DNA of 64,000 bases, from IMG/VR virus record IMGVR_UViG_3300042519_004024, positions 124,001 through 188,000 of that record. The stretch is one strand, 5' to 3'. The position numbers and the translations under genes are program-made. The first letter of the stretch is position 1; each line of letters starts with the position of its first letter. Shown here in pieces: positions 1-34,218 of this stretch. The notes beneath the pieces are model-generated. The model saw nothing but the letters and a program-made list of their open reading frames with translations, ran no database searches and was not told the origin of the DNA.

Positions 1-2016
1 TGATGTATCTCCAGAATCTACAGTATTTAATCTACCACCTATAACTACACTCCAATCTCCATCAGCATAATTTAATTCTCCGTGTGAAAATGCTAATTCA
101 TTTGATCTTGAACCAACACCACCAGCATGTGAACTACTTCCGTAAGCATTTGTACCTTTATTTTGTGCGTGAGAATATTGCCCTGACGCTATTGAGGAGT
201 CTCCTTCAGCATGTGCAAAAACATTTGTCGCTTGTGAAGAACCTTCAGCGTGTGAGAACATTCCTGACGCTAACGAACCACTACCCTCTGAGTGTGAAAA
301 ATTACCTGAAGCGGTTGTTGATCCACCTTCAGCGTGGGCTCCAATACCTGTGGCGTTACTTCCTGAACCTTCACTATGTGAATAATCACCTGATGATGTT
401 GTTAAATTACCTTCAGCGTGACTATAAATACCATAACTATATGATTGCCCTTCAGCAGATGAAAATTGACCAATAGAATATGAACCAGACCCTTTTGAGG
501 TTGATCCTGTACCTATTGCGTAAGTCCTTATACCACTAGCATTACCATAATGTCCACCAAAAACTTGGTTCCCTCCCCAAAATGATGGTCCGTTAGTGTC
601 AGACATAATAGCATTGTCTCCTAAAGTATCAACTGACGTGTCATATAAATAAACAATAGTATTTGTACCATCAAATGTTACCGCACTAACACTAAATACG
701 GATGATGGATATAATGAAGAATATGAAGTATCATCAAAAAATACAAATGAAGATATTCCTGTTGAAAAATTTGAGGATACGTCTCCGTAGGTTGACTCTA
801 TAGCACAAATACCTGCGGTACACCCCGTTAATAAATAACCGTTATTTGATCCTGTTTCAGTCAGTTCACCATTCGCATGTGAATAATCACCATAAGTTTT
901 ACTGTTATTACCTAACGAAAAAGATAATGTTCCATAAGCGTTAGAACCATTAGTTTGTGTTTCATCCCAAATTGATATTGGTGAACATCCGTGAACGTTT
1001 CTTACATAAAAGTCTACAAAACAATTTCCTGAAGAAGAACCAGGTAAGTTATAATATGTTGTGGCACTTATTGTGTTTGCCGATAACCCGTTTGTAAAAT
1101 TAGTCGGTCCGTTAACTGTTCCTCCCGTAAATACACTACCACCCCCTGATGGTGCTTGCCAAGTTGCGTTTCCATCATTGTCAGATGTTAAAACCCACCC
1201 ATTCAATTCGTTTCCATCCACATATTTAAAAGTCCCTGTTGTTCCCGTTCCACCAACCTGTAAATTAGCTGTTGGGATTTCTGTTCCGTCAGGATTTAAC
1301 CTCAAACCTAAACTACCATCGGATGGTAGTGGACCACCTTTAAGATACATTACTGAATTACCATTTTGTTCAAACCATAAATTACCAGTATTTCCTGTTT
1401 GTGAGATGTTTATTACCATCCCGTCACTATTATTACCAAGAGATAGTATTCCTTTATTTTTATAAAAATTACTTCCCGTTACAGATACCCCGCTTGGTCT
1501 AACATAATTGTCTCCACCATATTCTAATTTTATATGTTTGTTAGATGCTAACGTTGAGGAAGCCATAATAACTGTATTACCACTTGTATTATTATTTGCC
1601 GATTGTATTGTGTTTGTGTCAGGATTATCAAAATTTACAATAAACCCTTTTCTATTTATTGCGTTATATCCAGCAACTATGGTATATGGATTAATTGAAT
1701 TGTCAGATTGTACATTAACACTTCCAAGATTCATAATGTTACCACCACTTGATATATCTATCGTTACTCCACTTGTGGATCCAAAATAAACATTACCTTC
1801 ATCAAGAGGGTTTATTCGTAAAGGTGAACACGAATGTATGTTAGAGACATATAAGTCACTAATACAATAACCTGTTATTGCATCAAACACTTGTTGTATT
1901 GATGCTTTATATGATGAACCCGCAGGGTCTTGTGATGTATCTCCTGTTATTACGATGTGAAGTAAATCGTTTACGGTTACTCCACTCGCTAAGGTTCTTG
2001 TTGTTAATTTTGCCAT
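1..2016 (-). CDS. Tail fibre/adhesin-like protein with SHAEG (YadA-head/Hep_Hag-like) repeats; 3'-truncated by the window edge, absent from the ORF track
   Basis: Manual translation from ATG at 2016 (MAKLTTRTLASGVTVNDLLHIVITGDTSQDPAGSSYKA...) stays open for 672 codons to position 1. The N-terminus is paralogous to 6958..8979 and the distal part has tandem (S/A)H(A/S)EG repeats. Confidence 0.85.
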   Translation of the reverse strand, partial: MAKLTTRTLASGVTVNDLLHIVITGDTSQDPAGSSYKASIQQVFDAITGYCISDLYVSNIHSCSPLRINPLDEGNVYFGSTSGVTIDISSGGNIMNLGSVNVQSDNSINPYTIVAGYNAINRKGFIVNFDNPDTNTIQSANNNTSGNTVIMASSTLASNKHIKLEYGGDNYVRPSGVSVTGSNFYKNKGILSLGNNSDGMVINISQTGNTGNLWFEQNGNSVMYLKGGPLPSDGSLGLRLNPDGTEIPTANLQVGGTGTTGTFKYVDGNELNGWVLTSDNDGNATWQAPSGGGSVFTGGTVNGPTNFTNGLSANTISATTYYNLPGSSSGNCFVDFYVRNVHGCSPISIWDETQTNGSNAYGTLSFSLGNNSKTYGDYSHANGELTETGSNNGYLLTGCTAGICAIESTYGDVSSNFSTGISSFVFFDDTSYSSLYPSSVFSVSAVTFDGTNTIVYLYDTSVDTLGDNAIMSDTNGPSFWGGNQVFGGHYGNASGIRTYAIGTGSTSKGSGSYSIGQFSSAEGQSYSYGIYSHAEGNLTTSSGDYSHSEGSGSNATGIGAHAEGGSTTASGNFSHSEGSGSLASGMFSHAEGSSQATNVFAHAEGDSSIASGQYSHAQNKGTNAYGSSSHAGGVGSRSNELAFSHGELNYADGDWSVVIGGRLNTVDSGDTS
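40..480 (-). repeat. About 10 tandem 13-14 aa SHAEG-type coding repeats
   Basis: Units such as GIYSHAEGNL, GDYSHSEGSG, GIGAHAEGGS, GNFSHSEGSG, GMFSHAEG, NVFAHAEG, GQYSHAQNKG, GSSSHAGGVG; seen on the + strand as recurring ccttcagcgtg. Confidence 0.85.
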
Positions 2017-2039
2017 TTCTTTTTATAATATATATAAGT

Positions 2040-2321
2040 TTATTGAAATTCATATGGTACTCCATCCATAAATTCAAATAAATCTGAATTTTGGAATTGT
2101 TTATAGAATATTTCGTTGTCACAATACACACAACCATTATCATCTATAATTTTTACAACATAACTACCATATGTTTCATATATCGCAGGTAATGTAAATG
2201 TATATGGTATGGTAGATGTCGTATTTATATACTGACAAGTACCATAACAAGTGTCACAAACCCATATATCGTATGGTGATGTTCCTGATGTTACTGAATT
2301 TATAGTTACTATTGTTGCCAT
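2040..2321 (-). CDS. Small single-domain SprB/Ig-like virion protein (paralogue of 9009..9293 and 9295..9504)
   Basis: SGTSPYDIWVCD...YVVKIIDDNGC pattern and C-terminal FMDGxxYxFQ tail shared with 9009..9293. Confidence 0.7.
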   Translation of the reverse strand: MATIVTINSVTSGTSPYDIWVCDTCYGTCQYINTTSTIPYTFTLPAIYETYGSYVVKIIDDNGCVYCDNEIFYKQFQNSDLFEFMDGVPYEFQ

Positions 2322-2325
2322 AATT

Positions 2326-4422
2326 TTAACAGTTTCCGTTTGGTGTACATTTGAATGTTAACTTACCATTACCGTCAACCTCAAATATCTGAGATATTGC
2401 GTTACCACTCTGATTGATTGGTACTTTTATGTATGTTACACTCAAAGGTGTGGTTAATGAACTATCTTCGTAAGCATATACACCTGTTTGTATCGTGTTA
2501 ACATTAAACGATGTAAAGAAATTTGCCGCTACTCCAAAATTTGTAAGTTCACAAATAGGACAAGATAGTGAGAACTCTCCTGACGCTCTCCATTCTTTAT
2601 ATTTTGGTGTTGGTGTAGGTTCAGGCGTTAAACATTCTAAACATGTTGTATATGTTGTTGCGGTTGTCGCAGTAAAAGTATCTTGTGTTACAGAAATAAA
2701 TCCTGATGGTGGTGTATAACCAACATAGTTACCAATGTAATTATAACAATCACCTGTTGTTTTTAAGATATCTCCAACAATTACATTAATTGGTGGATAA
2801 GCGTTTTGAATTATCATTGTATTATTAGTACATGATGTGAATATAAATTGTGTTCCCATAGGATATGATGGTGGTATTGGTAATGCGCATTCAGTATCTC
2901 CCGTACAAGTTCCTCCTGAAACAATAGTTGTTGTTCCTGTTATACAACTAAATGATATTGTGTTTTCTTGTGCACAAATACCAAAAGAAGTATCACCTGT
3001 CAATACTATTGATTCTGAATTACCTGAACAACCTGTCCATGTAACTGTACATCCACTATTAGATGTGATAGTATAACAATAACATTGTGGTACAGGAGTA
3101 GGTGTCGGTGTTGGTGTTGGTGTCACACAAACAGAACATCCACTGTAAACGTCCAATACTTGTATTAAATTTCTATTACTAGATGCTGTAGTTGTTCCTA
3201 AATATGTTACACACTGTATTTGATTGGATGCGCTTCCGTATAAAAGTGCTAAGAATGTAGTTCCTGTACTAACAACGGAACCTGAATATGTTATCGGTTC
3301 TGTTATATAATAATGTTCACCCGTATCACAGTCTAATAAATCTTTAACAGACGAACAAACAAAACTTCCACTATCAACAACAAATGTTACCGTATCAGCA
3401 GATGGCGTTACAGGACAATATGATGGTGTAGGGGGTGGGGTTGGTGTTGGTGTTGGGGTTGTTCCACTAGTTGTTGTACTAATTGTTGCAGTAAACCCAC
3501 TACAAATATCAGGAGTCGGTGTTGGAGTTGGTGGCACACAAATACCATAATCTGAAGATAATATTCTAAAAGGTATTACCGTTGTTACGACATCAACCCA
3601 AGGATATGTTATACTACTTTCAGGATAATACGCCGGATTATCATTATACGCAATTAAAGTTGTTGTTGGTGTGTATGATTGTTCCCACCTAACAGTAATA
3701 CTATTCCAATAAACAATAGTATCAGTAGAAGTTGAGCAATCGTTATAAAATAAACCATAGTAAGGTTTTCCATTAATAAAACCAATATAATTTAAAGTAC
3801 ATTGCCATGGGTTAGTTGATAACAATTCATTATCCAAAGTAAAACACATATCAGGACCTGGTGTCGGTGTTGGTGTTGGTATGTCACATTCCAACAATAC
3901 GTCAAAATCTAAATCTGAACACGGATCTGTAGGAATTGGTGTTATTAAACAAGTACCTTCGTACATTACAGTCGTATCTAAATCTGGACAACTGTACGAT
4001 GTTGGGTTTTGTCCAAAGAAATCACAACTACCACCTAAACTATTAGATAAACACCAATTTGTTCCGTTAAAAAACATATATCCAGGAGTAGTTCCTCCTG
4101 TCCAATAATAATCACCCCCATAAGTACCTTCTAATGTGTAGGTACCATTATATCCACTATATGAATTAATTGGTATGGATATGCAATAGTTATTTTGACA
4201 ATATCCAGTACAAAGAGTATCATTACAATCGAGTACCAAAGTTGCGGTACCATCCATAAATACTGTCATCATTGATAAAGAACCTATGGTATAACACCCG
4301 TCGGGTATAACCGTATCACCAACAATATTAAAAACTAATCCAAGTGTTGTTGTATAACTCCAGTTAGGAACCCTAAAGCTAATACTACTATTTATACAAC
4401 TTTCTATTTGTACTGTTGCCAT
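2326..4422 (-). CDS. Cys-rich multidomain virion-associated protein with five Pro/Thr linkers
   Basis: 698 aa, about 39 Cys counted by hand, PTPTPTP-type linkers between domains; TATTTATA motif upstream. Confidence 0.7.
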   Translation of the reverse strand: MATVQIESCINSSISFRVPNWSYTTTLGLVFNIVGDTVIPDGCYTIGSLSMMTVFMDGTATLVLDCNDTLCTGYCQNNYCISIPINSYSGYNGTYTLEGTYGGDYYWTGGTTPGYMFFNGTNWCLSNSLGGSCDFFGQNPTSYSCPDLDTTVMYEGTCLITPIPTDPCSDLDFDVLLECDIPTPTPTPGPDMCFTLDNELLSTNPWQCTLNYIGFINGKPYYGLFYNDCSTSTDTIVYWNSITVRWEQSYTPTTTLIAYNDNPAYYPESSITYPWVDVVTTVIPFRILSSDYGICVPPTPTPTPDICSGFTATISTTTSGTTPTPTPTPPPTPSYCPVTPSADTVTFVVDSGSFVCSSVKDLLDCDTGEHYYITEPITYSGSVVSTGTTFLALLYGSASNQIQCVTYLGTTTASSNRNLIQVLDVYSGCSVCVTPTPTPTPTPVPQCYCYTITSNSGCTVTWTGCSGNSESIVLTGDTSFGICAQENTISFSCITGTTTIVSGGTCTGDTECALPIPPSYPMGTQFIFTSCTNNTMIIQNAYPPINVIVGDILKTTGDCYNYIGNYVGYTPPSGFISVTQDTFTATTATTYTTCLECLTPEPTPTPKYKEWRASGEFSLSCPICELTNFGVAANFFTSFNVNTIQTGVYAYEDSSLTTPLSVTYIKVPINQSGNAISQIFEVDGNGKLTFKCTPNGNC

Positions 4423-4440
4423 TAAATTATTACTTTATTA

Positions 4441-4448
4441 TATAAATA
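4441..4448 (-). promoter_or_regulatory. TATTTATA putative late-promoter motif
   Basis: 18 nt upstream of the ATG at 4422; member of a recurring motif family. Confidence 0.55.
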
Positions 4449-4484
4449 ATCAAAAGTTTATTTTATTTAAAATGATTTATAAAA

Positions 4485-5687
4485 TTATAGAGTTAAAGAA
4501 AAATCAATTCTATTTTTCCATTCACCATCTTTATTATTAACCCAATAAACCCATTTGTGTGGTTTTTCCGTAGTTTTTAAGTCTATTTTTAAATACTCCT
4601 GATATTTGTATAAATCTTGTCTATGTATAACATTCCCCATTTCATCTTCAACACCAATATAAATAAACTTAAAGTTATCAGTAAATGGGATATAAAGATT
4701 TAAATTATATGTTTTTTCAACTTTTTTATACCATTCAGTATTATCGTTTATTGGTGGAAATATTCCTTTAATTGTGTCTTGATGTAACTTTCTATTTTTA
4801 AAATTTATCCCGGCATAATCCTCATATTCTTTATGTGTTCTAACCGAACCTAATCCATATATTGTTAAATCAATATTATTATCTTCTTCTTGTAACATGT
4901 GTCTTAATCTACGTTTGGATTCATTATCCATTTCCCACCATTGTTTTTCAATAATACCATTGTTTTTATTTTCTTGATTAAAATCTGTCCAATGTTTTGT
5001 TCTACCTTCTCTTGTGTATTCGTGCCAAACAACAGTTTTATGTGGATGAAACAAATCATAACCTAAAGTGTATGATCTAATTGATAGACTAATTTCGTCA
5101 CCAGCAAAATAAATGTTTGGGTCGTACTTATATTCTTCACAATGTTTACCTAGTGTGAAAAAGAAATGTCCACTTACAAATCTAGCCGGTATTGGGGTTT
5201 CCAATGTTTGCCAATTTGGGATTGCGTGTGGTCTAAAAAGTATAGTACCACCTGGTGTGAAATTAGATGCAACCATCATATATGGTTCAACATTTAATAA
5301 TTGGTTATCTGATGGTCGGTACATCCCAGCATATGATGTGATGATTGGTTTTTCTGAACCTGTCATATTCATCATTTCAATCAATTCTATATCCCAATCT
5401 TGTAAAAATCTATGATGTGAATCTAACTGCATTGTATATTCTTCACCATCCCACAATTTTTGGATTTCTGAACGAGCCCAACAAAGTCCTTTACTTTCTG
5501 TCCAATGATAATCTAAAATTTTAAATCTCTCATCGTCTGTAAATTCTTCCATTGACTCAGTTTCATCTCTTTGCCAACAAACACCAAATGTTAAATTTTC
5601 AGGGTGTTTTGCTTTATTAATACAATCTCTAATTGTTGGTAAAAGTTCGGGATCCCTATAAGATGCGATTTGTACAAATATTTTCAT
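4485..5687 (-). CDS. GT60-like UDP-GlcNAc:polypeptide GlcNAc-transferase (GlcNAc/PF11397-like, Skp1 Gnt1/mucin-type initiating family)
   Basis: N-terminal IFVQIASYRDPEL..TI, SKGLCWARSEIQKLWDGEEYTMQLDSHHRF (DxH metal motif), GHFFF and YFAGDEISLSIRSYTLGYDLFHP match the family pattern as I recall it. Confidence 0.8.
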   Translation of the reverse strand: MKIFVQIASYRDPELLPTIRDCINKAKHPENLTFGVCWQRDETESMEEFTDDERFKILDYHWTESKGLCWARSEIQKLWDGEEYTMQLDSHHRFLQDWDIELIEMMNMTGSEKPIITSYAGMYRPSDNQLLNVEPYMMVASNFTPGGTILFRPHAIPNWQTLETPIPARFVSGHFFFTLGKHCEEYKYDPNIYFAGDEISLSIRSYTLGYDLFHPHKTVVWHEYTREGRTKHWTDFNQENKNNGIIEKQWWEMDNESKRRLRHMLQEEDNNIDLTIYGLGSVRTHKEYEDYAGINFKNRKLHQDTIKGIFPPINDNTEWYKKVEKTYNLNLYIPFTDNFKFIYIGVEDEMGNVIHRQDLYKYQEYLKIDLKTTEKPHKWVYWVNNKDGEWKNRIDFSLTL

Positions 5688-5732
5688 AATTAAAATATAT
5701 TCTAAAATATTTTAAAGTGAATTTAATATATC

Positions 5733-6953
5733 TTATAAATAATATAATACTTCTGCAGTTCCTGCAAATGTTGCGTTTGCACCTAATGGTGTTATACATA
5801 TCCACATTTCGTCAAGTGTTCCGTTAACATTAGAACCAACCCTAATTTGATTATCATCAATTTTTAATGTGGTAAGTGCTGATGTTCCTGATTCACCAAT
5901 AAGTGATGACATAATGTGTCCGTTTGTTGTAACAGTTGCAGTTGTTGTTCCAGTAAATAAACTATACTGAAATGGTGAGTTCGGTATATCCACCCAAGTT
6001 GGTGTTGTAGATATTGTTGGGTTATATTCAACTGTAACCAAATAGTTATCATTTGATGTATTTAAAATACTTAAACTACTATATTGTGATGTAACTGACT
6101 TATAACTTTGTTTAAGCCTATAACCAATATACGGATATTTTGTATCTGAAGTTTCTAAGGTCGTTGTTGTTTGGTGTTGTATACCTACTGTCGAATAAAG
6201 TCCGTTTAACGCTCCTTCGGTTGATACTTGACTACATAACATATCAAAGTATCCTGAACCAACACCTACTTGTCTTATTTCATACCTAATTGGTTGATTT
6301 GGTGATGACATGTAAACGGTAGGTATATTATTTGCCGAAGTATATTCTAAAAAATAAAATGTTTGACCCGATAATACCATTCCAAACCTCATCCTACCAA
6401 CACCTAACCATTGATAATCTACTGTCATTAGATTTGTGTTACTCCAATCAAAATTGTTTACGTCAAAGTCTGTATTATTCCAAGTTGTTGTATCGGCACT
6501 ATAAGTACAAGAACCACTTAAATAAATGTTAAATGTTATCGCACTTGTTACACCATTACTTTCTAAAAAGAACCCGTCAAATACCGAATTGTACGTGGAT
6601 GCCGTTGTTGATGTGAAACATCCAATTCGTTTAATTATATTTGTTTCTATTTGGAAGTTTGAAAAACTGCCTTCAAATAGTTGACTTTTACCTGGTTGAT
6701 AAATTGGGTGTGTTTTAGTTTGTCTAACAACCAAATCGTTATTTGCCGATGTTGACATTCTAACTCTCGCATATTGTTGGTTAAATACTGATGTTGCAGT
6801 ACCTGCGGTTACTTCATTGACCTGTAAAGGATTTTTATCGTAAACGTGTTTAATGTCTAATAAATTTTGAACCGCTGCGGTCCTTAATCTACCGAAAGCG
6901 TCCATATTTGGTCCGTCCGCGTACTTTATTGAGTTGTTAAAAATAAATGACAT
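5733..6953 (-). CDS. Hypothetical virion protein, beta-rich (possible lectin-like fold)
   Basis: 406 aa; N-terminal DAFGRLR motif typical of aquatic phage structural proteins; located in the fibre cluster. Confidence 0.5.
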   Translation of the reverse strand: MSFIFNNSIKYADGPNMDAFGRLRTAAVQNLLDIKHVYDKNPLQVNEVTAGTATSVFNQQYARVRMSTSANNDLVVRQTKTHPIYQPGKSQLFEGSFSNFQIETNIIKRIGCFTSTTASTYNSVFDGFFLESNGVTSAITFNIYLSGSCTYSADTTTWNNTDFDVNNFDWSNTNLMTVDYQWLGVGRMRFGMVLSGQTFYFLEYTSANNIPTVYMSSPNQPIRYEIRQVGVGSGYFDMLCSQVSTEGALNGLYSTVGIQHQTTTTLETSDTKYPYIGYRLKQSYKSVTSQYSSLSILNTSNDNYLVTVEYNPTISTTPTWVDIPNSPFQYSLFTGTTTATVTTNGHIMSSLIGESGTSALTTLKIDDNQIRVGSNVNGTLDEMWICITPLGANATFAGTAEVLYYL

Positions 6954-6957
6954 AATA

Positions 6958-8979
6958 TTAAATTAAATACCAATTTCCGTTTCTCACCATAATGGTGAGA
7001 GACATATAGTTTATATTCATATCAACATATGAATTTCCGTCAATCAAACCCGATGCCGGTGTTAATCTTATTCTAAAAAACCCGGAAGTTCCGGCTTCGT
7101 CTTTTATGACTAAATAATACCCGTCTCTTGACGTTGTTGTTGGTAATGTTAAATCAACATTTGATGATCCACTAACACCCCAATATGATTTATCCCAAGT
7201 TAAGGTTTGTGATGATGTTATCGCGCTTGTTACAAATACATTGATGGGTAAATTTTGATAGGTTGTTGCAGAAATTGTGTTTGCGGTTAAACCATCAGTA
7301 AATGAAGTAGACCCTGTTACAGTACCACCTGTAAATCCATTACTTAACGAACCATCACCCATAACATATTTTGATGATGTACCGCCTTGTGTAATAAATT
7401 TATCTGCATTTATGTATTGAAAATAATCTATTGAATTAGTACTAGTTCCTGTAAGCGTAGAACCTGGTTTATCATATATGGTGTTAATAATTGTGTAAAT
7501 ACCTGCAACACTTATAGGTGCTACATTATTCCCCGCCGTAACAAGCACTTGACTATTTAGCAATGTTAATGTAGTCAAAGATCCCGTTATCGTTATACCA
7601 TTACCACCTAAAGCAGTAACAATACAATCAACTATTGCTAAGTTACCTGCACTAGCTGATGGTGTTACTACACTATTACATCCCTTTATAATAACTTGTG
7701 CTGAGGCATTGCTTACTGATACTCCAACATTTTTATTACCGTTGATAATAGTGATGCCAGCACCAGAAATTTGAATACCTAAAGTACATTGCAGTTCTGA
7801 GTTAATAATTTCAACATAACCACTAGATGATTTGGTTACTTGAGTATCAATAGTACAGTTGCTTATATAAGCTTGAGCTGTTCCACTAATGACAAGGTTA
7901 CTCATCTTCAAACCTGAAATGCGAGTACCAGAACCTAATGTACCAATAGTTAATGTACCTGATAATAGAGTATTTGCTCCTGTTAACTCTGATGTTGAAA
8001 TTGTCGTATTAGTGTTAGCGACCGTAACATTTTCTGAATAAGTACCAGGGTGGATAATTATTGTTTTACGAGACCCAGTAAGTAAGGTTAATGCCTTAGT
8101 AATGGTCGCAACAGGATTAAGTAAATCACCATTACCTGTAGTATCATTTCCATCTATTTGACTTACGTGTATCTCATATTGAAAATTTGACGAAACATTA
8201 TAATATGTTGTTGCCGAAATTGTGTTTGCGGTTAATCCACCATCAATTTTAGTATTACCACTTACATGTAGTTTTTGTGTTGGTGTGGTTGTTCCAATAC
8301 CAACATAACCTCTTGTCGCACCTAAACCTTGTATGTGTATATCAGGTGTTGTCCCATTAGCGGTTTGTCCTGCATAAAATCTAATGTAATCCTCAGTTCC
8401 TGTGCCAGGTGGGTTTAAAAAATTAAAACCATATGTTTCATTACCAGCATAAAAGAATGCGTCACCAACTTTACCATATCCAGGATACGAGACATCATTC
8501 CACGCCCTCATACCTAATTCAAATCCCGCAATTGGTTTTGTTAAATATGGTGTAATTGCGACAGAAATTCTTGGTACGTTTGTATTCCCACTTAAAAGTA
8601 ACCTACCTCCAACACTTTCAGAATCATAATATAATCTACTTTGGATACCTCTAGCGTCAAAAACATATTGTGGTGTGCTTGTATTAATACCTATTCTTTT
8701 ATTTAAAATATCTAAAGTAATTCCGCTTGTTGATCCAAAATACACATCACCCTCATCTAACGGATTTATGTTTAATGGGGAACATGAATGAATATTTGAG
8801 ACATAAAAATCGGTAAAACAATATCCCGAAATAGAATCAAATACTTGTGATATTTTTGCCTTATATGATGAACCATCAGGATCTTGTGAGGTATCTCCTG
8901 TTATTACAATATGTATTAAATCGTCTGTAGTTACACCTGACGCTAATACTCTTTCTGTAAGTCTTTGATAAACTGCCAT
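6958..8979 (-). CDS. Modular tail fibre/spike: shared N-terminal anchor, GIGT motifs, putative right-handed beta-helix, small C-terminal domain
   Basis: IGINTSTPQYVFD and YVGIGTTTPTQKLHVSGN motifs; HVSQIDGNDTTGNG...NPVATITKAL...IIIHPGTYSENV is a typical beta-helix cap; ends LTLP...IKDEAG...IDG...GNWYLI. Confidence 0.7.
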   Translation of the reverse strand: MAVYQRLTERVLASGVTTDDLIHIVITGDTSQDPDGSSYKAKISQVFDSISGYCFTDFYVSNIHSCSPLNINPLDEGDVYFGSTSGITLDILNKRIGINTSTPQYVFDARGIQSRLYYDSESVGGRLLLSGNTNVPRISVAITPYLTKPIAGFELGMRAWNDVSYPGYGKVGDAFFYAGNETYGFNFLNPPGTGTEDYIRFYAGQTANGTTPDIHIQGLGATRGYVGIGTTTPTQKLHVSGNTKIDGGLTANTISATTYYNVSSNFQYEIHVSQIDGNDTTGNGDLLNPVATITKALTLLTGSRKTIIIHPGTYSENVTVANTNTTISTSELTGANTLLSGTLTIGTLGSGTRISGLKMSNLVISGTAQAYISNCTIDTQVTKSSSGYVEIINSELQCTLGIQISGAGITIINGNKNVGVSVSNASAQVIIKGCNSVVTPSASAGNLAIVDCIVTALGGNGITITGSLTTLTLLNSQVLVTAGNNVAPISVAGIYTIINTIYDKPGSTLTGTSTNSIDYFQYINADKFITQGGTSSKYVMGDGSLSNGFTGGTVTGSTSFTDGLTANTISATTYQNLPINVFVTSAITSSQTLTWDKSYWGVSGSSNVDLTLPTTTSRDGYYLVIKDEAGTSGFFRIRLTPASGLIDGNSYVDMNINYMSLTIMVRNGNWYLI

Positions 8980-8988
8980 GTTTTATTC

Positions 8989-8996
8989 TATAAATA
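8989..8996 (-). promoter_or_regulatory. TATTTATA putative late-promoter motif
   Basis: 9 nt upstream of the ATG at 8979. Confidence 0.55.
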
Positions 8997-9008
8997 CTTT
9001 AATATTAT

Positions 9009-9293
9009 TTATTGGAATAAATAATTATTACCGTCCATAAAAGTGAAGTAATTGGCGTCTTGATAAATTTTTTGTCCACATATTAAGAAGTTATTTGCAA
9101 TACACCCATTAGTATCGATTATTTTAACATAAAGAATTTGTTCATAAGGAAAATAATCATCGGTATCAAATATCACACTTGGTGGAATAAATGTTGTTCC
9201 TGAAACATAAAAACAAGACGTGTTAGTTGCATCACATATATAAACGTCATATGGTGCCTGCCCACTTGTTACTCCTGTTATTTCTATATTCAT
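9009..9293 (-). CDS. Small single-domain SprB/Ig-like virion protein (paralogue of 2040..2321)
   Basis: SGQAPYDVYICD...LYVKIIDTNGC...FMDGNNYLFQ. Confidence 0.7.
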   Translation of the reverse strand: MNIEITGVTSGQAPYDVYICDATNTSCFYVSGTTFIPPSVIFDTDDYFPYEQILYVKIIDTNGCIANNFLICGQKIYQDANYFTFMDGNNYLFQ

Positions 9294-9294
9294 T

Positions 9295-9504
9295 TTATGT
9301 ACAATTTACTAATTCAAAATACTCACATCCTGTTGAATCGATAGTTTTAACCATTAATGTATTCGCACTTGAATAGAAGGGGTTAAGTGTATAAGTTCCT
9401 CCCGTTGTACTTATTAGATAACAGTTATTTCCATATTCATCACATAGATAAATACTTAATGGTGGTGTTCCACCTGTTGTTCCTGATATAGTAATAACAC
9501 TCAT
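9295..9504 (-). CDS. Small SprB/Ig-like protein, third paralogue lacking the FMDG tail
   Basis: GGTPPLSIYLCD...LMVKTIDSTGC; tightly coupled to its neighbours. Confidence 0.65.
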   Translation of the reverse strand: MSVITISGTTGGTPPLSIYLCDEYGNNCYLISTTGGTYTLNPFYSSANTLMVKTIDSTGCEYFELVNCT

Positions 9505-11981
9505 TATTGATAAACTAATATGAATCCATCTTCAGTCATCATAAAATAACTGTCTTCGGTTAATATTATAAATGTGTCTCCACAGTCATCTTGACAAGTC
9601 ACGTCATAATCAATTTTTAATCTTAGGTTAAAAATACAATCAGCCAATGGATCTTCATCACCATTACATTTAGAAACAATTTCAAGAGTGTTTGTCAATA
9701 AATCAACAGTATAACTTTGTATGTTTGGTATACTACTTAAAATACCTTCGATTGTTGATTGCCAAAGGGTGTCTTGTGGAATATCATTTAACGTAGTTGC
9801 AGTATAGAAAGGCACAGTGTATGTAGTATCACCGGATTGACAATCGGCGTACACTAAGAAATCACCATTTTCTGTTGTAATCGTAAATACGTCTTCAGTT
9901 AAAATAAAACACGTATCTCCCGATCCAGGACAATCGATTTCTATTTCACAACTAAACACCGCACCACTAAAACTACAACCTGAGTATCCCGAAATGATAT
10001 CAACATATCCTTCATTTAACATCTCTGAAAGTCCTCTTTTTGTCCCAACAGTTGTGGTAAAAGTACTATTACAAACATTAAATAGTTGGTAGGATGTTGG
10101 TGCGATTCCGTTACATATTATTGTAAAATATTGTATATCGTAACAACCGTTACTATCTGTTATTTCGACATAATAATTACCAGCAGATAATCCCGTAACT
10201 GTTGAACCTGTTTGTCCATTACTCCAATTATATGTGAATGTAGGTTCTCCCTGATATATAACAACCTCGGCAAATCCATCATTACCGTTTACACAATCAA
10301 CTTTTTGTATTGATGTAACTAATTGTCCGCTAGTTGTTATTGTAAATCCTGTCGATACTGCACATCCGACACTATCTGTAACCGTTATTGTATAGTTACC
10401 AGGTAATAAGTTATTATATGTTACTGCAGTTGTTGTTGTATCAATTAAAGTGTCACCATTACTTAACACATAATCTAATACACCACTATAACCACTATAC
10501 ACCTCAATATATGCAACTCCGTTTGAAACCCCACAAGTTGATCCGGTAGTTGTTGCACTTACCGTAAATTTTTGAGTAGAATTTATATTTATTGTTGTTG
10601 TATATTCACAGGCAGTTCCTGAACCTGAAATCGTTAAAACATAAGTATCATTTTGTAAATTTGTAAAATTATTAGTCTGATTTAAACTAGTGTTTTGAAT
10701 AACTTGATTTGAATTTTGTCCCGATAGTGTATAAGTATAGTATCCACCCAAACCAGCAATCTGTACGTCAATCTCACCATTATTTTGATTACAGTCTGAG
10801 TTGGTGACAATTATGTCGACTACATTAAATCCTCCTACGGGACTTAGAAACCCGCTTAATGTTGTTTCACAAAAATTAGCATCTCTTACAACTACTTGGT
10901 AGGTTCCTGCAGCTAAATTTGTTAATGTAAACGTGTTTGAAAGTGTGTATCCAACCTGCGCAGTTGATGCGGAATAATAAAAAGGTGCGGTTCCTCCTGT
11001 TAAAATATATGTTAAACTACCATCCGAAGCAAAACAAGAAGGTGTGGACGCACTTAATAATCCAATCCCTAATGGTGCCGCGTTTCCAACATATTCACTT
11101 TTTGTTAGTTCACATCCATTCGCATCAGTCACAGTACAAGTATATACTCCTTGTGTTAGTCCTGTTATTAATTGTGTTGTTTCACCATTACTCCATAAAT
11201 ACGTATAAGGCCCCGTACCCGTTAAACCTGTTACCGCTAACTTACCTTTATCAATAACACAATTTGAGGTGTTAACAACCCAAAACCCATAATCTAAAGA
11301 AGTACTTGCAGATATTATAGCATTTTCAGTGTTAGCAGTGGTACCACCTGAATCAAAAACAGTAGCATAATAAATACCACTAGGTAAACCGTTAAAATCG
11401 TATGGTAAAGTTCCTGTTGTTTCTACATCGTAAGGAACACCGTCTTGATAAAGAAGAATAGTGTATGGTGCACCTGAAGATGTTGCACTTATAGTCAAAA
11501 ATCCTGTATCTTGACCACAAGTAGTGCCCGATGCAGTAACCACATTCGCCTCAAAACATCCTGTTACATTAACATTAATATATAATTCATTATTTTGTAA
11601 ATTAAGAGTATCATTTAATCTGAACACATAAGTACCACCCGTTAATCCTGTAAATGTTATAGGTGAACTACTTGTTTGAGCGGTTAAAGTTCCCGGAATA
11701 ATATTATCAATTGTGTATGGTGCAACACCACCATATGAAGTGAAAGTTACACTACCTGTTGCTGCGGAGCAAACCCCCGTAACTTGGAATCCGTAACTAA
11801 GTGGTCCTGATGTACATGTTTGAGTACAAGTCACCCCTGTAGCAATATAAACTCCTCTTGCCGAACCGGAAAATGATTCATCTATACATATACTTTCACC
11901 AAGTGAAACACCGAATTGGTATAATCCACAACAATCAATATATTCATAAACACCATCGGTTAAACCTGATATACAAGCCAT
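9504..11981 (-). CDS. SprB-repeat adhesin-like virion protein
   Basis: Repeated GxxPY(T/Y)YxWSNGxTxxxITGLxxGxYxxTVTDxNGC units, e.g. GPYTYLWSNGETTQLITGLTQGVYTCTVTDANGC and PTFTYNWSNGQTGSTVTGLSAGNYYVEITDSNGC. Confidence 0.8.
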   Translation of the reverse strand: MACISGLTDGVYEYIDCCGLYQFGVSLGESICIDESFSGSARGVYIATGVTCTQTCTSGPLSYGFQVTGVCSAATGSVTFTSYGGVAPYTIDNIIPGTLTAQTSSSPITFTGLTGGTYVFRLNDTLNLQNNELYINVNVTGCFEANVVTASGTTCGQDTGFLTISATSSGAPYTILLYQDGVPYDVETTGTLPYDFNGLPSGIYYATVFDSGGTTANTENAIISASTSLDYGFWVVNTSNCVIDKGKLAVTGLTGTGPYTYLWSNGETTQLITGLTQGVYTCTVTDANGCELTKSEYVGNAAPLGIGLLSASTPSCFASDGSLTYILTGGTAPFYYSASTAQVGYTLSNTFTLTNLAAGTYQVVVRDANFCETTLSGFLSPVGGFNVVDIIVTNSDCNQNNGEIDVQIAGLGGYYTYTLSGQNSNQVIQNTSLNQTNNFTNLQNDTYVLTISGSGTACEYTTTININSTQKFTVSATTTGSTCGVSNGVAYIEVYSGYSGVLDYVLSNGDTLIDTTTTAVTYNNLLPGNYTITVTDSVGCAVSTGFTITTSGQLVTSIQKVDCVNGNDGFAEVVIYQGEPTFTYNWSNGQTGSTVTGLSAGNYYVEITDSNGCYDIQYFTIICNGIAPTSYQLFNVCNSTFTTTVGTKRGLSEMLNEGYVDIISGYSGCSFSGAVFSCEIEIDCPGSGDTCFILTEDVFTITTENGDFLVYADCQSGDTTYTVPFYTATTLNDIPQDTLWQSTIEGILSSIPNIQSYTVDLLTNTLEIVSKCNGDEDPLADCIFNLRLKIDYDVTCQDDCGDTFIILTEDSYFMMTEDGFILVYQ

Positions 11982-24715: not shown

Positions 24716-26554
24716 TTATGAAAAGTCTACCGTTTTAAGGCTCTTAACCCTAACCTTAATATCCTTATTGTCAAATTTAACTTGATAAATTTGATCTGGT
24801 TCCGCAAAAATAGTATCGTCAATTAATCCAATTTCTCTTGTAACTTTATTAACATATTTTTGTGATGTTTCAGATGAAGAATATTGTCCACCAACTTTAT
24901 TGTATATTTTTAAATCAGATAGTGTAGAAACACCGGCTACGTTTTGTATTAATCGTCTAACATCAGATACGTTAACATTTTGTCCTAACTCCCTATTGCC
25001 AGGTTCCATATAGTTTGCAACAGAATTAATGATTTCGGTAATGACTTGTCCTTGGTTTCTATCCGATTCCATCACTACAAAAATTTCAAATTCCAAATCA
25101 ACTACCTTCGCAACATCAATAGAAATGTAATCGTTTATCATTCTATATTTAGAAAGGTATGTTGCTAAATTAGATTTCAAGTTATTTGAAACGACTTGTG
25201 TTAGTTTTCCTGAAGTATCGTAAGATAATATTTGAATTCTAATTTTATTGTTATTTTCAGTTATTGAAACTTTTGCAGGAGCCCCAAACTTACCCGGCAT
25301 TGTATCTATTAATGATTTATAATCATTCACAGTTACCGCTCTTTTTTGTGCCGCAAAATTAAAAGACACCATATTTCTAACCTCTTCTGTTGTTGGTGGG
25401 TTTGATCCTCCAATCGCAGCGGTAACATTTGTTATTGATAATGAATTTTGTACGTTTGTGTTTACTATGTCTGAAGGTCCTGTTATTGAAAAATCTATGG
25501 TACCTACTTGATTAATTACCCCTACACCAACATTTGATGCAATCCCACCACCTATTCTATATTGAACAAAAACTGTAGTATTTGGTTGTACGGTTAAACC
25601 TAACCCTATATTATTTTGGTAATTCGCCAAATCTAATTTAATGCCATTTCTTGCAAAGTCAGCCAATTGTTGGTTTGGGGTGTTAGTTCCCCCACCAAAT
25701 TGTACCTTCATAAACCCTTCAGGTGTGTATTCTGTTATAAATCTATTTTCAGTCTTTATATATTTACCAACTTTAACACCCGCATTATCTGTTGGTTTTG
25801 TTGGGTCCTCAATAAATACAGTATCTTCAGCTAAAGCGTCCACCTCATACCATCTATTTTGTGAACTTAAAAAATCACCGTATGATGGTATATTAGGGTA
25901 ACTAGTCCCATCTTTTTGTATTATGGATGTTACTCCAAGTACGTTTCTTTCAGGTAAAAAGAAATTAAAAAACGGAACAACGTCAGCAGGATTAATAACC
26001 CTTTTGAATACCTTTGTTGTACCATTAACAACCACTTCCCTTTTTGTTATAATATAATTTATAATTTTATTATTAGCATCAAAAGTAGGTACTTTTGTTC
26101 TATTTACGAAACCTTCTTGATTATACTGTGTTGAGAAGTCGATATCGTAAACAGTCTCAAAGGATGTCCCCGCACCATTAAATTGTGATCCGGCCCTTAA
26201 AATACCTAAATATCTATAATCCTCACTATCACCTAATGGTGGTACTGTAATAGATATGTCAACAACTGCAACTGATGGGCGATAACCTGGTATTTTTAAA
26301 CCATAAGTTCTTGCAATATTGTAAATTGATGATCTTTGTTGAGCATACTGTAGAACAGTTTCTTGTATACTTCTATCAATATGAAAATGTAAATTATCAG
26401 CAACCGCAGCATTCAAATCCATTAGAACTGAAAACACCGATGCGTCATTAAAATTTTGTACTAATTCAGGGTAATACTGTTTAGTATAATTTATCAAGTC
26501 TTGTCTTATCCCTTGAAAGTCCCTCGTTGTATAATTTATCTTTTGGTTAGCCAT
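24716..26554 (-). CDS. Baseplate wedge subunit (T4 gp6/baseplate J-like)
   Basis: INYTTRDFQGIRQDLINY...DLNAAVADNLHFHIDRSIQE...A..R.SIY..A...G and AQKRAVTVNDY are gp6 hallmarks. Confidence 0.85.
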   Translation of the reverse strand: MANQKINYTTRDFQGIRQDLINYTKQYYPELVQNFNDASVFSVLMDLNAAVADNLHFHIDRSIQETVLQYAQQRSSIYNIARTYGLKIPGYRPSVAVVDISITVPPLGDSEDYRYLGILRAGSQFNGAGTSFETVYDIDFSTQYNQEGFVNRTKVPTFDANNKIINYIITKREVVVNGTTKVFKRVINPADVVPFFNFFLPERNVLGVTSIIQKDGTSYPNIPSYGDFLSSQNRWYEVDALAEDTVFIEDPTKPTDNAGVKVGKYIKTENRFITEYTPEGFMKVQFGGGTNTPNQQLADFARNGIKLDLANYQNNIGLGLTVQPNTTVFVQYRIGGGIASNVGVGVINQVGTIDFSITGPSDIVNTNVQNSLSITNVTAAIGGSNPPTTEEVRNMVSFNFAAQKRAVTVNDYKSLIDTMPGKFGAPAKVSITENNNKIRIQILSYDTSGKLTQVVSNNLKSNLATYLSKYRMINDYISIDVAKVVDLEFEIFVVMESDRNQGQVITEIINSVANYMEPGNRELGQNVNVSDVRRLIQNVAGVSTLSDLKIYNKVGGQYSSSETSQKYVNKVTREIGLIDDTIFAEPDQIYQVKFDNKDIKVRVKSLKTVDFS

Positions 26555-26556
26555 AA

Positions 26557-27021
26557 TTAAATATTAATAATTACGAATTCTCTACTTCCGAATGCTTTAT
26601 TTTCGTCAGTATAATCGATTTTTAGTTTTGCTGTGTATTCCGCAGTATTTGCCCCCGGTATTTTATATATACTTGCTTGACCCAATAATTCATAATCTAA
26701 TTGCCCAACAACTTCGTCGGTTTCGGTGTAGGGTTCTATAGTAATACTATTAATTAACAAATTTGGTATATATTTTGCAACTTGTTCTTCAATGTCAGAT
26801 TTTATATTTTCAAACGTTTCACCATCTAATGGTTCAAAAATAAATTCATAAATTCTAGTTCCAAAATCGGGCAAATAATATCTACTTCCCTTTCTTGTTA
26901 ATATTAAATGCAATAAGTCTGTCCTAATCTCTTCATCTGATTGTTGAGTTAGTAACAAATAATCTCCTACATTACTTTGTCTAAACGGAAAACTTATTCC
27001 ATATGTTCTACCATCTGCCAT
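26557..27021 (-). CDS. Baseplate wedge subunit, gp25/GPW-like
   Basis: GISFPF...EEIRTDLLHLILTRKGSRYYLPDFGTRIYEFIFEP. Confidence 0.9.
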   Translation of the reverse strand: MADGRTYGISFPFRQSNVGDYLLLTQQSDEEIRTDLLHLILTRKGSRYYLPDFGTRIYEFIFEPLDGETFENIKSDIEEQVAKYIPNLLINSITIEPYTETDEVVGQLDYELLGQASIYKIPGANTAEYTAKLKIDYTDENKAFGSREFVIINI

Positions 27022-29251: not shown

Positions 29252-29276
29252 TTTTAATTTATTTTAATAATTTATT

Positions 29277-30656: not shown

Positions 30657-30693
30657 ATTGTTGAGATTTTGTTCCTTGTTTTAATAAATATTG

Positions 30694-31146
30694 TTAAACT
30701 AATGAATAATTCATCATCTCAAAAGATAAATTTTTCTCTGATAAAATGTCAGTCAACTCTCTTAAAATGTTTTTTATGTCTGGGCGTACATCCAGCGTAT
30801 ATCTTACTTTTGGTGGGTACAGTTTCGCATCAATAATTCTATGACAAATTGTCTCATTTCCAACCTTTAAAATAATGTTAAATATTTCAGGTCCATCTGT
30901 ATTTGACGTTTCAAGGATTGATGAGTCCTCTTCGATTTGGAATCTGTTCTCAAGCATATAAACAACACATTTGTTTCGTAGTTTTGTTTGTAGTGTGTTT
31001 GAAAGTGATTTTATAAAATCATACAATTCTACACTACCTTTAACTTTAGGGTTATACCCTTTTACGTTAAAGAATCTTTGAACTACAAAGTTGTTGTTTA
31101 GCGTGATTAAGAACTCAACCTTTGTTACATCATTCTGCTCTTTCAT
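30694..31146 (-). CDS. Hypothetical protein in the replication block
   Basis: 150-aa ORF between the exonuclease and helicase genes. Confidence 0.6.
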   Translation of the reverse strand: MKEQNDVTKVEFLITLNNNFVVQRFFNVKGYNPKVKGSVELYDFIKSLSNTLQTKLRNKCVVYMLENRFQIEEDSSILETSNTDGPEIFNIILKVGNETICHRIIDAKLYPPKVRYTLDVRPDIKNILRELTDILSEKNLSFEMMNYSLV

Positions 31147-31150
31147 AATT

Positions 31151-32158: not shown

Positions 32159-32179
32159 TTCTGTATTATTACAGGGTTC

Positions 32180-33187: not shown

Positions 33188-33211
33188 ATATTGTTTGTTT
33201 TTTTAAAAGTT

Positions 33212-33244
33212 AAAAAAAGGTAGTGACTTTATCAATCACTACCT
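33212..33244 (-). terminator. Rho-independent terminator after the SSB gene
   Basis: 9-bp stem AGGTAGTGA/TCACTACCT with a 9-nt loop and a minus-strand T-run. Confidence 0.7.
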
Positions 33245-33263
33245 ATCTTTTATAGGATTTTTA

Positions 33264-34121: not shown

Positions 34122-34160
34122 AGATTTTTGTTTTTAATTTATACTCTTTTATCTATAACA

Positions 34161-34188
34161 ATTATAAGTGATTTTTAATAAATGTCAA
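34161..34188 (-). promoter_or_regulatory. Perfect sigma70-type promoter TTGACA-N16-TATAAT upstream of the SSB gene
   Basis: Minus strand TTGACA (34188-34183), 16-nt spacer, TATAAT (34166-34161), 39 nt before the ATG at 34121. Confidence 0.7.
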
Positions 34189-34190
34189 AT

Positions 34191-34214
34191 AAAAAAGGGA
34201 CTTTTCAGTCCCTT
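34191..34214 (-). terminator. Rho-independent terminator separating the structural and replication blocks
   Basis: Perfect 8-bp stem AAGGGACT-GAAA-AGTCCCTT plus T-run, just after the stop at 34219. Confidence 0.8.
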
Positions 34215-34218
34215 CTTA

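What the first reader, a model, noticed from the sequence alone, without database searches (positions are those of the whole stretch)
1753..9293. Duplicated adaptor+fibre cassette: shared anchor, swapped distal domains
Seen: two copies of the arrangement [93-94 aa Cys protein ending FMDGxxYxFQ] then [fibre], at 2321-2040 then 2016-1, and at 9293-9009 then 8979-6958. The fibre N-termini are 68/85 identical by my manual alignment, then diverge completely (SHAEG roll versus beta-helix). Inference: two fibres plug into equivalent virion sockets through paralogous adaptors, giving a multi-receptor, interchangeable fibre system.
Basis: partly seen in the sequence, partly recalled or inferred. Interest (0 to 1): 0.6.

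Follow-up and report, generated by a model that had tools for sequence, protein, structure and literature searches.

The report
Paired tail-peptide and fibre-anchor module
A large uncultured lake-water phage carries two copies of a gene pair, a small protein ending in a conserved 22-residue peptide followed by a tail fibre starting with a conserved 50-residue module, and this pairing recurs in dozens of related phages with different fibre bodies, so it is probably a previously undescribed way of attaching exchangeable fibres to the virus particle.

Summary
The two fibres share 68/86 N-terminal residues (E 5e-42). The two upstream 93/94-aa proteins are 38% identical and both end in F-x-F-M-D-G-x2-Y-x-F-Q.

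The window is part of a 214-kb lake-water jumbo myovirus record, and the cassettes lie just after the baseplate genes.

Relatives narrow the coupled parts to two elements. One is a ~22-aa extreme C-terminal "tail" (K-x-F-Q-D-x3-F-x-F-M-D-G-x2-Y-x-F-Q). The other is a ~50-aa extreme N-terminal fibre "anchor" (LTxRxLAxGVTxxDLIHIVITGDTSQxPxGSSYKA).
- 59 of 67 distinct anchor fibres have a tail gene ending within 150 nt upstream.
- 54 of 56 tailed small genes are followed by an anchor fibre; only 3 of 36 tail-less paralogues are.
- Full tails and anchors match in number in six large records: 2:2, 1:1, 1:1, 2:2, 1:1, and 1:1 with the two genes far apart.
- Fibre bodies behind the anchor range from 153 to 1662 aa.

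The duplication is old (dS about 1.1, dN/dS 0.15). The family has at least 296 clusters, all unnamed, with no Pfam, PHROG, PDB or isolate-phage match.

Physical binding is inferred, not shown; the complex prediction gave no verdict. I judge it a new variant of the known adaptor/anchor fibre-attachment principle.

The parts
9504..11981 (-). 825-aa SprB-repeat protein directly upstream of cassette B. It carries two copies of a second tail type (ILTEDxF...TExGxFLVY), one internal and one at the extreme C-terminus (about 9507-9572).
   Evidence: Pfam PF13573 SprB, E 2.6e-14; C-terminal motif; conserved position after the p983 homologue in relatives
9295..9504 (-). Small C: 69-aa tail-less paralogue of the small proteins (beta-sandwich N-domain only). 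Its homologues in relatives are ~95 aa and end in the second tail type.
   Evidence: BLASTP against small B, E 7e-10; relatives
9009..9293 (-). Small B, 94 aa: N-terminal Cys-containing beta-sandwich (residues 1-72) followed by the C-terminal tail.
   Evidence: AF2 model with six strands, pLDDT 62-81, tail below 50
9012..9077 (-). Tail B: the last 22 residues of small B (QKIYQDANYFTFMDGNNYLFQ region). This is the most conserved part of the family.
   Evidence: Invariant K, F, M, F and near-invariant Q, F, D, Y columns in A2; always at the extreme C-terminus
8821..8979 (-). Anchor B: fibre B residues 1-53, the conserved N-terminal module LTxRxLAxGVTxxDLIHIVITGDTSQxPxGSSYKAxIxQV.
   Evidence: always at the extreme N-terminus; dN/dS 0.15 against anchor A
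6958..8979 (-). Fibre B, 673 aa: anchor, neck motif (residues 54-68), proximal domain, beta-helix (about 247-563), junction motifs at residues 248-262 and 563-577, and a C-terminal domain (574-673) that is always followed by a vsp406 homologue.
   Evidence: (phrog_4577 tail protein)
5733..6953 (-). vsp406: a virion structural protein homologue, coupled to the C-terminal domain of fibre B.
   Evidence: phrog_1645, E 1.7e-51; 27-32% identity to cyanophage 'virion structural proteins'; adjacency 5 of 5
4485..5687 (-). Glycosyltransferase (GlcNAc family). It lies between the two cassettes and is found in every two-cassette relative examined.
   Evidence: PF11397, E 2.8e-67; phrog_24687; synteny
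2326..4422 (-). Cys698: a 698-aa Cys-rich protein with (Thr-Pro)n linkers, directly upstream of cassette A. It is unrelated to the SprB825 protein.
2040..2321 (-). Small A, 93 aa, a paralogue of small B. Its C-terminal tail lies at about 2043-2108.
1867..2016 (-). Anchor A: fibre A residues 1-50.
1..2016 (-). Fibre A, residues 1-672 of 791 (the gene continues 357 nt beyond the window start): anchor, neck, proximal domain, junction motif (310-326), second neck motif (332-346), SHAEG-type repeats (about 480-660).
   Evidence: phrog_25468

Best explanation
The two cassettes are paralogous copies of a two-gene fibre-attachment module in a freshwater jumbo myovirus.

Proposed mechanism (inferred). 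The fibre's extreme N-terminal ~50 residues (two predicted beta-strands and a helix) and the extreme C-terminal ~22-residue peptide of the protein encoded just upstream (a predicted strand-turn-strand, F-x-F-M-D-G-x2-Y-x-F-Q, disordered on its own) fold together into a joint. The upstream protein's N-terminal Cys-containing beta-sandwich then holds this joint on the baseplate periphery or on the next protein inward. The anchor and tail are kept constant, so any fibre body placed behind the anchor can be mounted. The phage therefore carries two different fibres: A with a YadA-like beta-roll, and B with a beta-helix plus a tip coupled to vsp406. Relatives carry one or two fibres of very different make-up.

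Shown: paralogy, strict terminal position, adjacency, co-loss, matching numbers of tails and anchors, purifying selection, and exchange of distal modules.

Inferred: direct tail-anchor contact, presence of the small protein in the virion, and where it docks.
For: Paralogy.

Virion context. Sheath, hub, gp6-like and gp25-like baseplate genes lie upstream on the same strand. A virion structural protein homologue lies inside the region.

The tail is the most conserved part of the small family. It survives even where the N-domain is replaced by an unrelated sequence (L019/L020). It also occurs on 741-960-aa proteins (L112, L120).

Linkage, ascertained from the anchor side: 59 of 67 distinct anchor fibres have a tail gene ending within 150 nt upstream.

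Linkage, ascertained independently from the tail side:
- 54 tailed small genes are followed by an anchor fibre, 2 are not.
- 3 tail-less paralogues are followed by one, 33 are not.
- Fisher p = 4e-19.
- 3 of 10 clusters at 50% identity hold both states.

Co-loss: in L009/L010 the small-A homologue is cut to 73 aa without a tail and no fibre follows.

Whole-record counts of full tails to anchors: 2:2, 1:1, 1:1, 2:2, 1:1, 1:1. In G003 the second cassette lies 72 kb away. In G005 the tail gene and a 2138-aa anchor fibre are far apart, yet both are kept.

Position: anchors are always within the first 25 residues and tails always within the last 4, with no fusions.

Selection: dN/dS 0.15 with dS about 1.1 between anchors A and B, so the constraint is on the protein and this is not a recent conversion.

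Structure: in AF2 the tail is disordered on its own (pLDDT below 50) beside a folded six-strand sandwich. The anchor alone gives two strands and a helix at moderate confidence.

Fibre bodies behind the anchor span 153-1662 aa and are mosaics of shared modules.
Against: There is no direct evidence of binding. The only complex prediction (3+3 chains) scored 0.02, which the tool states is no verdict either way.

No virion proteomics or isolate exists. There is no match in 50,697 phage records.

The anchor occurs in other lineages without any tail gene (L027, L029, L031, L034), so it can presumably dock without the tail.

There are a few exceptions within the lineage (L115/L119, L120, L132).

The tail and anchor coding regions lie only 18-39 nt apart. 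Part of their co-inheritance is therefore expected from linkage alone, and the loci are phylogenetically related.

Within the window the anchors are 79% identical but the tails only about 50%, so tail-anchor specificity, if any, is not obvious.
Confidence: 0.55

Rival explanations
1. The small protein is a non-structural assembly factor (chaperone). It acts on the fibre's N-terminus, for example to nucleate trimerisation or hand the fibre to the baseplate, and is not part of the finished particle.
For: Small genes next to fibre genes are often assembly factors (established knowledge of T4 gp38/gp57A and the lambda and Mu Tfa proteins). The coupling statistics fit equally well. The tail is disordered alone.
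Against: Known fibre chaperones are encoded downstream and co-vary with the C-terminal receptor-binding part. Here the gene is upstream and is coupled to the invariant N-terminus, while distal parts change freely. No Pfam or PHROG chaperone family matches. The N-domain has conserved Cys residues and recurs as the N-terminal module of 69-736-aa proteins in the same structural operon, as expected of particle components.
Confidence: 0.15
2. The tail and the anchor do not touch each other. Both bind a common third partner, for example the conserved 983-aa protein or the SprB-repeat protein of the baseplate periphery, and are needed together there.
For: Matching numbers and co-loss fit a three-part joint as well. 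The gene order p983, SprB825, small, fibre is conserved. The anchor exists without tail genes in other lineages.
Against: The second cassettes (window cassette A; G003 at 201 kb) travel as small+fibre pairs without a second p983 or SprB825 copy.
Confidence: 0.15
3. There is no functional coupling. The small gene and the fibre start are simply neighbours in a conserved late operon, and the conserved stretch spanning the small gene's 3' end, the intergenic gap and the fibre's 5' end is a recombination or translation-coupling unit.
For: The gap is only 18-39 nt. Conserved junction motifs elsewhere in the fibres do look like recombination linkers.
Against: The constraint is on the protein (dN/dS 0.15, dS about 1.1). 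The intergenic DNA and gap length are not conserved. In G005 the tail and anchor are both kept although unlinked. The tail is lost exactly where the fibre is lost.
Confidence: 0.08

Closest known systems
Adapter system of coliphage K1-5/K1E and Salmonella phage SP6 (small trimeric adapter protein plus two tailspikes with 7- and 11-residue N-terminal docking peptides; as described in PMC6872550)
   Same: A small protein sits between the tail and exchangeable receptor-binding proteins. The receptor-binding proteins share a short conserved N-terminal element while their bodies differ. The particle carries two specificities.
   Different: There is no sequence or domain relation. The small proteins are 93-94 aa against about 300 aa, and no T7-fibre-like N-terminus or T4gp10-like domain was found. 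Here each fibre has its own small protein, with 1:1 counts, rather than one adapter carrying two spikes. The conserved element on the adapter side is an extreme C-terminal peptide. The host phage is a jumbo myovirus, not a podovirus.
Anchor-branch receptor-binding protein systems of Klebsiella phages and CBA120/G7C (anchor domain plus T4gp10-like branching domain on RBP1, conserved docking peptide on RBP2; PMC6872550, PMC13352976, PMC7506556, PMC8262889)
   Same: The build is modular: an N-terminal structural module for attachment and a swappable C-terminal specificity module. Paralogous N-termini occur within one genome. Distal parts are exchanged horizontally.
   Different: No T4gp10-like branching domain was detected in any of the ten proteins of the region. 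The partner of the conserved N-terminus appears to be a separate small protein's C-terminal peptide rather than a domain of another fibre.
T4 long tail fibre gene chain gp34-gp35-gp36-gp37 (established knowledge, recalled from memory)
   Same: Genes appear to lie in the physical order of the chain. Here each protein's C-terminal element is coupled to the N-terminal module of the next gene: second tail type to small N-domain (23 of 24), first tail type to anchor, and fibre-B C-domain to vsp406 (5 of 5).
   Different: No homology was detected. The elements here are short terminal peptides or modules, and the serial chain is my inference only.

Membership tests
K1-5/SP6-type tailspike adapter | Adapter of about 300 aa with a T7-fibre-like N-terminus and T4gp10-like D2/D3 docking domains (PMC6872550) | tested here: not met
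   Pfam scan of both small proteins and eight neighbours found no T4_gp9_10 or T7 fibre family at E <= 0.01. The small proteins are 93-94 aa.
K1-5/SP6-type tailspike adapter | One adapter carries two different receptor-binding proteins through two distinct short N-terminal peptides | tested here: not met
   Counts of tails to anchors are 1:1 or 2:2 in six records, and each fibre has its own upstream tail gene. The two anchors are 79% identical, not two different peptides.
Anchor-branch RBP system (Klebsiella phages, CBA120, G7C) | T4gp10-like branching domain on the primary RBP | tested here: not met
   No Pfam match in fibre A or B. The only hint is an Atlas structural row for fibre B 517-673 in which 11% of cluster members carry PF07880, with TM 0.31/0.68.
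Anchor-branch RBP system (Klebsiella phages, CBA120, G7C) | Conserved N-terminal attachment module with exchangeable distal specificity module | tested here: met
   The anchor is conserved in 67 distinct fibres of 153-1662 aa with mosaic bodies.
Tail fibre assembly chaperones (Tfa/gp38-like) | Membership of a known chaperone family; gene downstream of the fibre; co-variation with the fibre's C-terminal tip | tested here: not met
   No Pfam or PHROG hit for the small proteins. The gene is upstream and is coupled to the N-terminal anchor. By these criteria vsp406, not the small protein, has the downstream, tip-coupled position.
SprB repeat (PF13573) | Significant match to the repeat profile | tested here: not met
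   For the small proteins: no Pfam hit, and hhalign of A2 against the 825-aa SprB protein gives probability 2.3% with only the xKIIDxNGC strand alike. The 825-aa neighbour itself is a member (E 2.6e-14).
Ig-like beta-sandwich fold (small protein N-domain) | Two-sheet sandwich with a significant structural match | tested here: inconclusive
   The AF2 model has six strands and mean pLDDT 64. The best Foldseek PDB hit has E 0.027 and TM 0.39-0.47, and all hits are generic sandwiches.
Right-handed beta-helix / pectate-lyase-like tailspike body (fibre B) | Match to Beta_helix or Pect-lyase families | tested here: inconclusive
   Atlas features score 0.90 to a PF12708 cluster, and structure TM 0.53 to a DUF1565/NosD/Beta_helix cluster over 247-563. 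Pfam gave no hit at 0.01 and PDB sequence search none.
YadA-like head repeats / left-handed beta-roll (fibre A) | Match to trimeric autotransporter head repeats | tested here: inconclusive
   phmmer hit to the BpaC adhesin 7o23, E 0.0063, residues 481-637. No Pfam hit.

The most novel reading that the evidence does not exclude
The operon encodes a serial 'C-terminal peptide docks onto the next gene's N-terminal module' assembly code. The proposed chain is: SprB-repeat protein (second tail type), then small C N-domain; small C-type proteins (second tail type), then small B N-domain; small B (first tail type), then fibre anchor; fibre B C-domain, then vsp406. Under this reading gene order spells out a branched or chained fibre, and short terminal connectors make every link exchangeable. 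That would be a general plug-and-play grammar for receptor-binding organelles in freshwater jumbo phages, unrelated to the T4gp10-type branching known so far.
Probability: 0.2. Interest if true: 0.7.

Novelty: new variant of a known kind. Interest (0 to 1): 0.5.

Why it matters
How fibres are mounted decides which parts of a phage can be exchanged to change its host. The mounting systems described so far come from cultured phages of enterobacteria and rely on T4gp10-like domains or T7-type adapters.

This is an unrelated and so far unnamed solution, with at least 296 protein clusters, all annotated hypothetical. It is common in abundant lake-water jumbo phages, probably of Flavobacteriales. 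Its defining elements are short enough (22 and 50 residues) to test directly by pull-down, peptide competition or structure determination.

If confirmed, it gives a simple sequence rule for finding receptor-binding proteins and their attachment partners in uncultured phage genomes. It would also show that the adaptor-plus-conserved-N-terminus principle arose more than once.

Tried and rejected
Complex prediction. Fibre B 1-110 x3 plus small B x3, with my own alignments, scored 0.02 and 0.01. The tool's verdict is "no answer", so I count it neither for nor against.

Isolate phages. There was no DNA or protein match for the region, fibre B or small B in 50,697 records. No cultured relative or proteome could be used.

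PDB sequence searches. Profiles of the anchor and the small family, and fibre B, gave nothing significant.

Foldseek of the small-protein model gave only generic sandwiches. The top hit was a type 9 secretion C-terminal domain at E 0.027. I rejected that as an identification because the match is weak.

Small protein as a single SprB repeat: not supported.

Larger duplicated unit. Cys698 is unrelated to SprB825 and to SprB533, so only small gene plus anchor is duplicated.

Readthrough, frameshift or split-gene reading of tail plus anchor: rejected. The gaps are 18-39 nt in varying frames, and no ORF carries both elements.

Recent gene conversion as the cause of anchor identity: rejected. dS is about 1.1, nucleotide identity is 75%, and A-type and B-type anchors group by orthology across genomes.

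Host from bacterial genomes. The only hit was a 3.3-kb contig binned in a Flavobacteriales MAG, which is weak evidence.

Expression. Three freshwater metatranscriptome runs hold short exact contigs of the region, but contigs cannot prove transcription.

Procedural points. No alternative genetic code was used.
Full report
CONTEXT

The window is bases 124001-188000 of a 213,924-bp IMG/VR virus record. The record is labelled provirus and CheckV puts it at 71% complete. GC content is 30-37% and no tRNA was found in the window.

Almost all genes lie on the minus strand. PHROG matches identify these tail and baseplate genes:
- tail sheath, 53384-56599
- baseplate hub, 50850-51608
- a possible tape-measure protein, 48845-50683
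- gp6-like baseplate wedge, 24716-26554
- gp25-like baseplate wedge, 26557-27021

The record is therefore a jumbo contractile-tailed phage.

In transcription order, the genes after the wedge genes are:
- several large unnamed proteins, the last of 983 aa
- an 825-aa SprB-repeat protein (PF13573)
- small C (9295-9504)
- small B (9009-9293)
- fibre B (6958-8979)
- a virion structural protein homologue, vsp406 (phrog_1645; 27-32% identical to cyanophage "virion structural proteins")
- a GlcNAc-family glycosyltransferase (PF11397)
- a 698-aa Cys- and Thr-Pro-rich protein
- small A (2040-2321)
- fibre A (2016 to beyond the window; 791 aa in full)
- a 533-aa protein with SprB-like repeats

The same DNA is found in lake-water metagenomes from many samples. 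Three freshwater metatranscriptome runs hold short exact contigs of it. The only hit in bacterial genomes is a 3.3-kb contig binned in a Flavobacteriales MAG.

THE OBSERVATION

All coordinates are right. The fibre N-termini are 68/86 identical, E 5e-42. The small proteins are 38% identical over their whole length, E 7e-16, and both end in FMDGxxYxFQ. Only three ORFs of the whole record end that way, the third being the 825-aa protein with a divergent version.

Three corrections apply:
- A third, tail-less paralogue, small C, exists.
- The fibres share two more short motifs beyond residue 90.
- Fibre A continues past the window edge.

WHAT IS CONSERVED

I aligned 20 small proteins from related viral contigs (alignment A2). 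The most conserved part is the last ~22 residues, K-x-[FY]-Q-D-x3-F-x-F-M-D-G-x2-Y-x-F-Q. The N-terminal part, which has three near-invariant Cys residues, varies. In L019/L020 it is replaced by an unrelated Lys/Thr-rich sequence while the tail is kept.

I aligned 19 fibre N-termini (alignment A3). The invariant core is residues ~5-50, LTxRxLAxGVTxxDLIHIVITGDTSQxPxGSSYKAxIxQV.

Residues 51-90, the CxxDxYVSNIHSCSP "neck", form a separate module. It follows the anchor in only some fibres and also occurs inside many large fibres, including fibre A at residues 327-350.

AlphaFold2 models small B as a six-strand beta-sandwich (residues 1-72, pLDDT 62-81) with a tail that is disordered on its own (pLDDT below 50). 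The anchor alone is modelled as two strands and a helix at moderate confidence.

Neither element matches Pfam, PHROGs, PDB sequences or any isolate phage. The word-based protein search finds 296 clusters of the small family. All are unnamed and without Pfam domains, and some lie on contigs up to 293 kb.

LINKAGE IN RELATIVES

Two independent scans of IMG/VR were made, one seeded with the anchor and one with the tail pattern.

From the anchor side, 59 of 67 distinct anchor-bearing fibres have a tail-bearing gene ending within 150 nt upstream. The usual gap is 18-39 nt.

From the tail side, I took distinct small ORFs with enough sequence downstream:

| Small ORF | Followed by anchor fibre | Not followed |
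|---|---|---|
| With tail | 54 | 2 |
| Without tail | 3 | 33 |

Fisher p is 4e-19. The loci are related, so this overstates independence. However, 3 of 10 clusters at 50% identity contain both states.

The exceptions are informative:
- In L120 the tail sits on a 960-aa protein one gene further up.
- In L112 both a 741-aa protein and the small protein carry tails, and two anchor fibres follow.
- In L009/L010 the small-A homologue is cut to 73 aa without a tail, and no fibre follows.

Whole-record searches of five near-complete relatives, plus this record, give these counts:

| Record | Full tails : anchors | Note |
|---|---|---|
| G000 (this record) | 2:2 | the two cassettes of the window |
| G001 | 1:1 | |
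| G002 | 1:1 | |
| G003 | 2:2 | second cassette 72 kb from the first |
| G004 | 1:1 | |
| G005 | 1:1 | tail gene and a 2138-aa anchor fibre far apart, both kept |

Anchors are always within the first 25 residues and tails always within the last 4. No ORF carries both.

The anchor also occurs in other lineages with no tail gene upstream (L027, L029, L031, L034).

AGE AND SELECTION

The two anchors are 75% identical in DNA, with dS about 1.1 and dN/dS 0.15. A-type and B-type small proteins and anchors each group with their counterparts in other genomes. The duplication is therefore old and the similarity is maintained by selection on the protein.

Only the small gene plus anchor is duplicated. 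The proteins upstream of the two cassettes are unrelated.

Relatives with a single cassette lack the block from the glycosyltransferase through Cys698, small A and fibre A.

FIBRE BODIES

Behind the anchor, fibre lengths run from 153 to 1662 aa. The bodies are mosaics of modules also seen in fibres A and B.

Fibre B 247-563 is probably a right-handed beta-helix. Fibre A 481-637 weakly resembles YadA-type head repeats.

The C-terminal domain of fibre B (residues 574-673) is followed by a vsp406 homologue in 5 of 5 distinct cases. Every vsp406 homologue with a visible upstream gene follows such a domain.

INTERPRETATION

The best reading is that tail and anchor are the two halves of a joint that mounts fibres on the particle, with the small protein's sandwich domain as the inner attachment. 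This works like the adapter and anchor-branch systems of K1-5/SP6, Klebsiella phages and CBA120 (PMC6872550, PMC13352976, PMC7506556, PMC8262889). It fails their membership tests: no T4gp10-like domain, no T7-type adapter, and one small protein per fibre.

Direct contact is inferred only. The single complex prediction gave no verdict.

The rivals are a non-structural assembly factor, a shared third partner, and mere synteny. I weigh them in the rival explanations.

The different upstream neighbours suggest different sites.

A wider pattern fits a chain in which gene order follows physical order, but it remains speculative:
- A second tail type (ILTExG..LTTExGDxLVF) is followed by an ORF starting with the small N-domain in 23 of 24 cases.
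- The N-domain is N-terminal in 113 of 113 ORFs.

LIMITS

All relatives are metagenomic contigs and many loci are related. ORFs were called mechanically. Models are of moderate confidence.

Noticed in passing
window 7249-7293 and 8194-8238 (fibre B residues 563-577, 248-262); 1039-1089 and 979-1023 (fibre A residues 310-326, 332-346); 8776-8820 (fibre B residues 54-68): Two short motifs, GLxANTISATTYxNLP and CxxDxYVxNxHxCSP, bracket the modules inside both fibres. They recur up to four times in relatives' fibres, and within this genome they occur only in the two fibres. In a lake DNA run, otherwise unrelated contigs match the stretch only over 30-40 nt at exactly these places (7247-7302 and 8203-8235). 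They may be linkers at which fibre modules recombine.
   Followed up: partly
window 6961-7260 (fibre B C-terminal domain) and 5733-6953 (vsp406): The C-terminal ~100 residues of fibre B are always followed by a homologue of the 406-aa virion structural protein, 5 of 5 distinct cases. This holds even when the 'fibre' is only anchor plus this domain (153-180 aa). vsp406 may be a tip protein or a tip-specific assembly factor.
   Followed up: partly
window 9507-9572 and about 9840-9915 (825-aa protein); L008 5389-5676, L009 5377-5679 and many others: A second kind of extreme C-terminal tail, ILTExG..LTTExGDxLVF, ends the small-C-type proteins of relatives and occurs twice in the window's 825-aa SprB protein, while the window's small C lacks it. 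ORFs ending in it are followed by an ORF starting with the small N-domain in 23 of 24 cases.
   Followed up: partly
window 4485-5687 and 2326-4422: A GlcNAc-family glycosyltransferase (PF11397, E 2.8e-67) sits inside the fibre module, next to a 698-aa Cys-rich protein with five (Thr-Pro)n linkers. The two co-occur in all two-cassette relatives examined. The enzyme may glycosylate this virion protein; this is untested.
   Followed up: no
window 9504-11981; L004 10038-11639 (just outside the window): The phage encodes proteins built of SprB-type repeats, the repeat of the Flavobacterium gliding-motility adhesin, on both sides of the fibre cassettes. With the low GC and the single Flavobacteriales MAG hit, this points to a Bacteroidota host.
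   Followed up: no
window 27392-34875: A block of replication and nucleotide genes interrupts the tail and baseplate genes on the same strand: ribonucleotide reductase, DnaB-like helicase, exonuclease, UvsX-like recombinase and an SSB.
   Followed up: no
window 35143-42156 and 42415-48804: Two giant ORFs of 2337 and 2129 aa lie between the tail genes. They have essentially no family match; the only hit is phrog_16450 over 30 residues.
   Followed up: no
L142 532-1041 (G003 second cassette): The second anchor-bearing gene of relative G003 continues after the anchor into a collagen-like GTSGxxG repeat, and the ORF ends after 169 aa inside the repeat. It is either a very short fibre or an assembly or frameshift problem in the repeat.
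   Followed up: no
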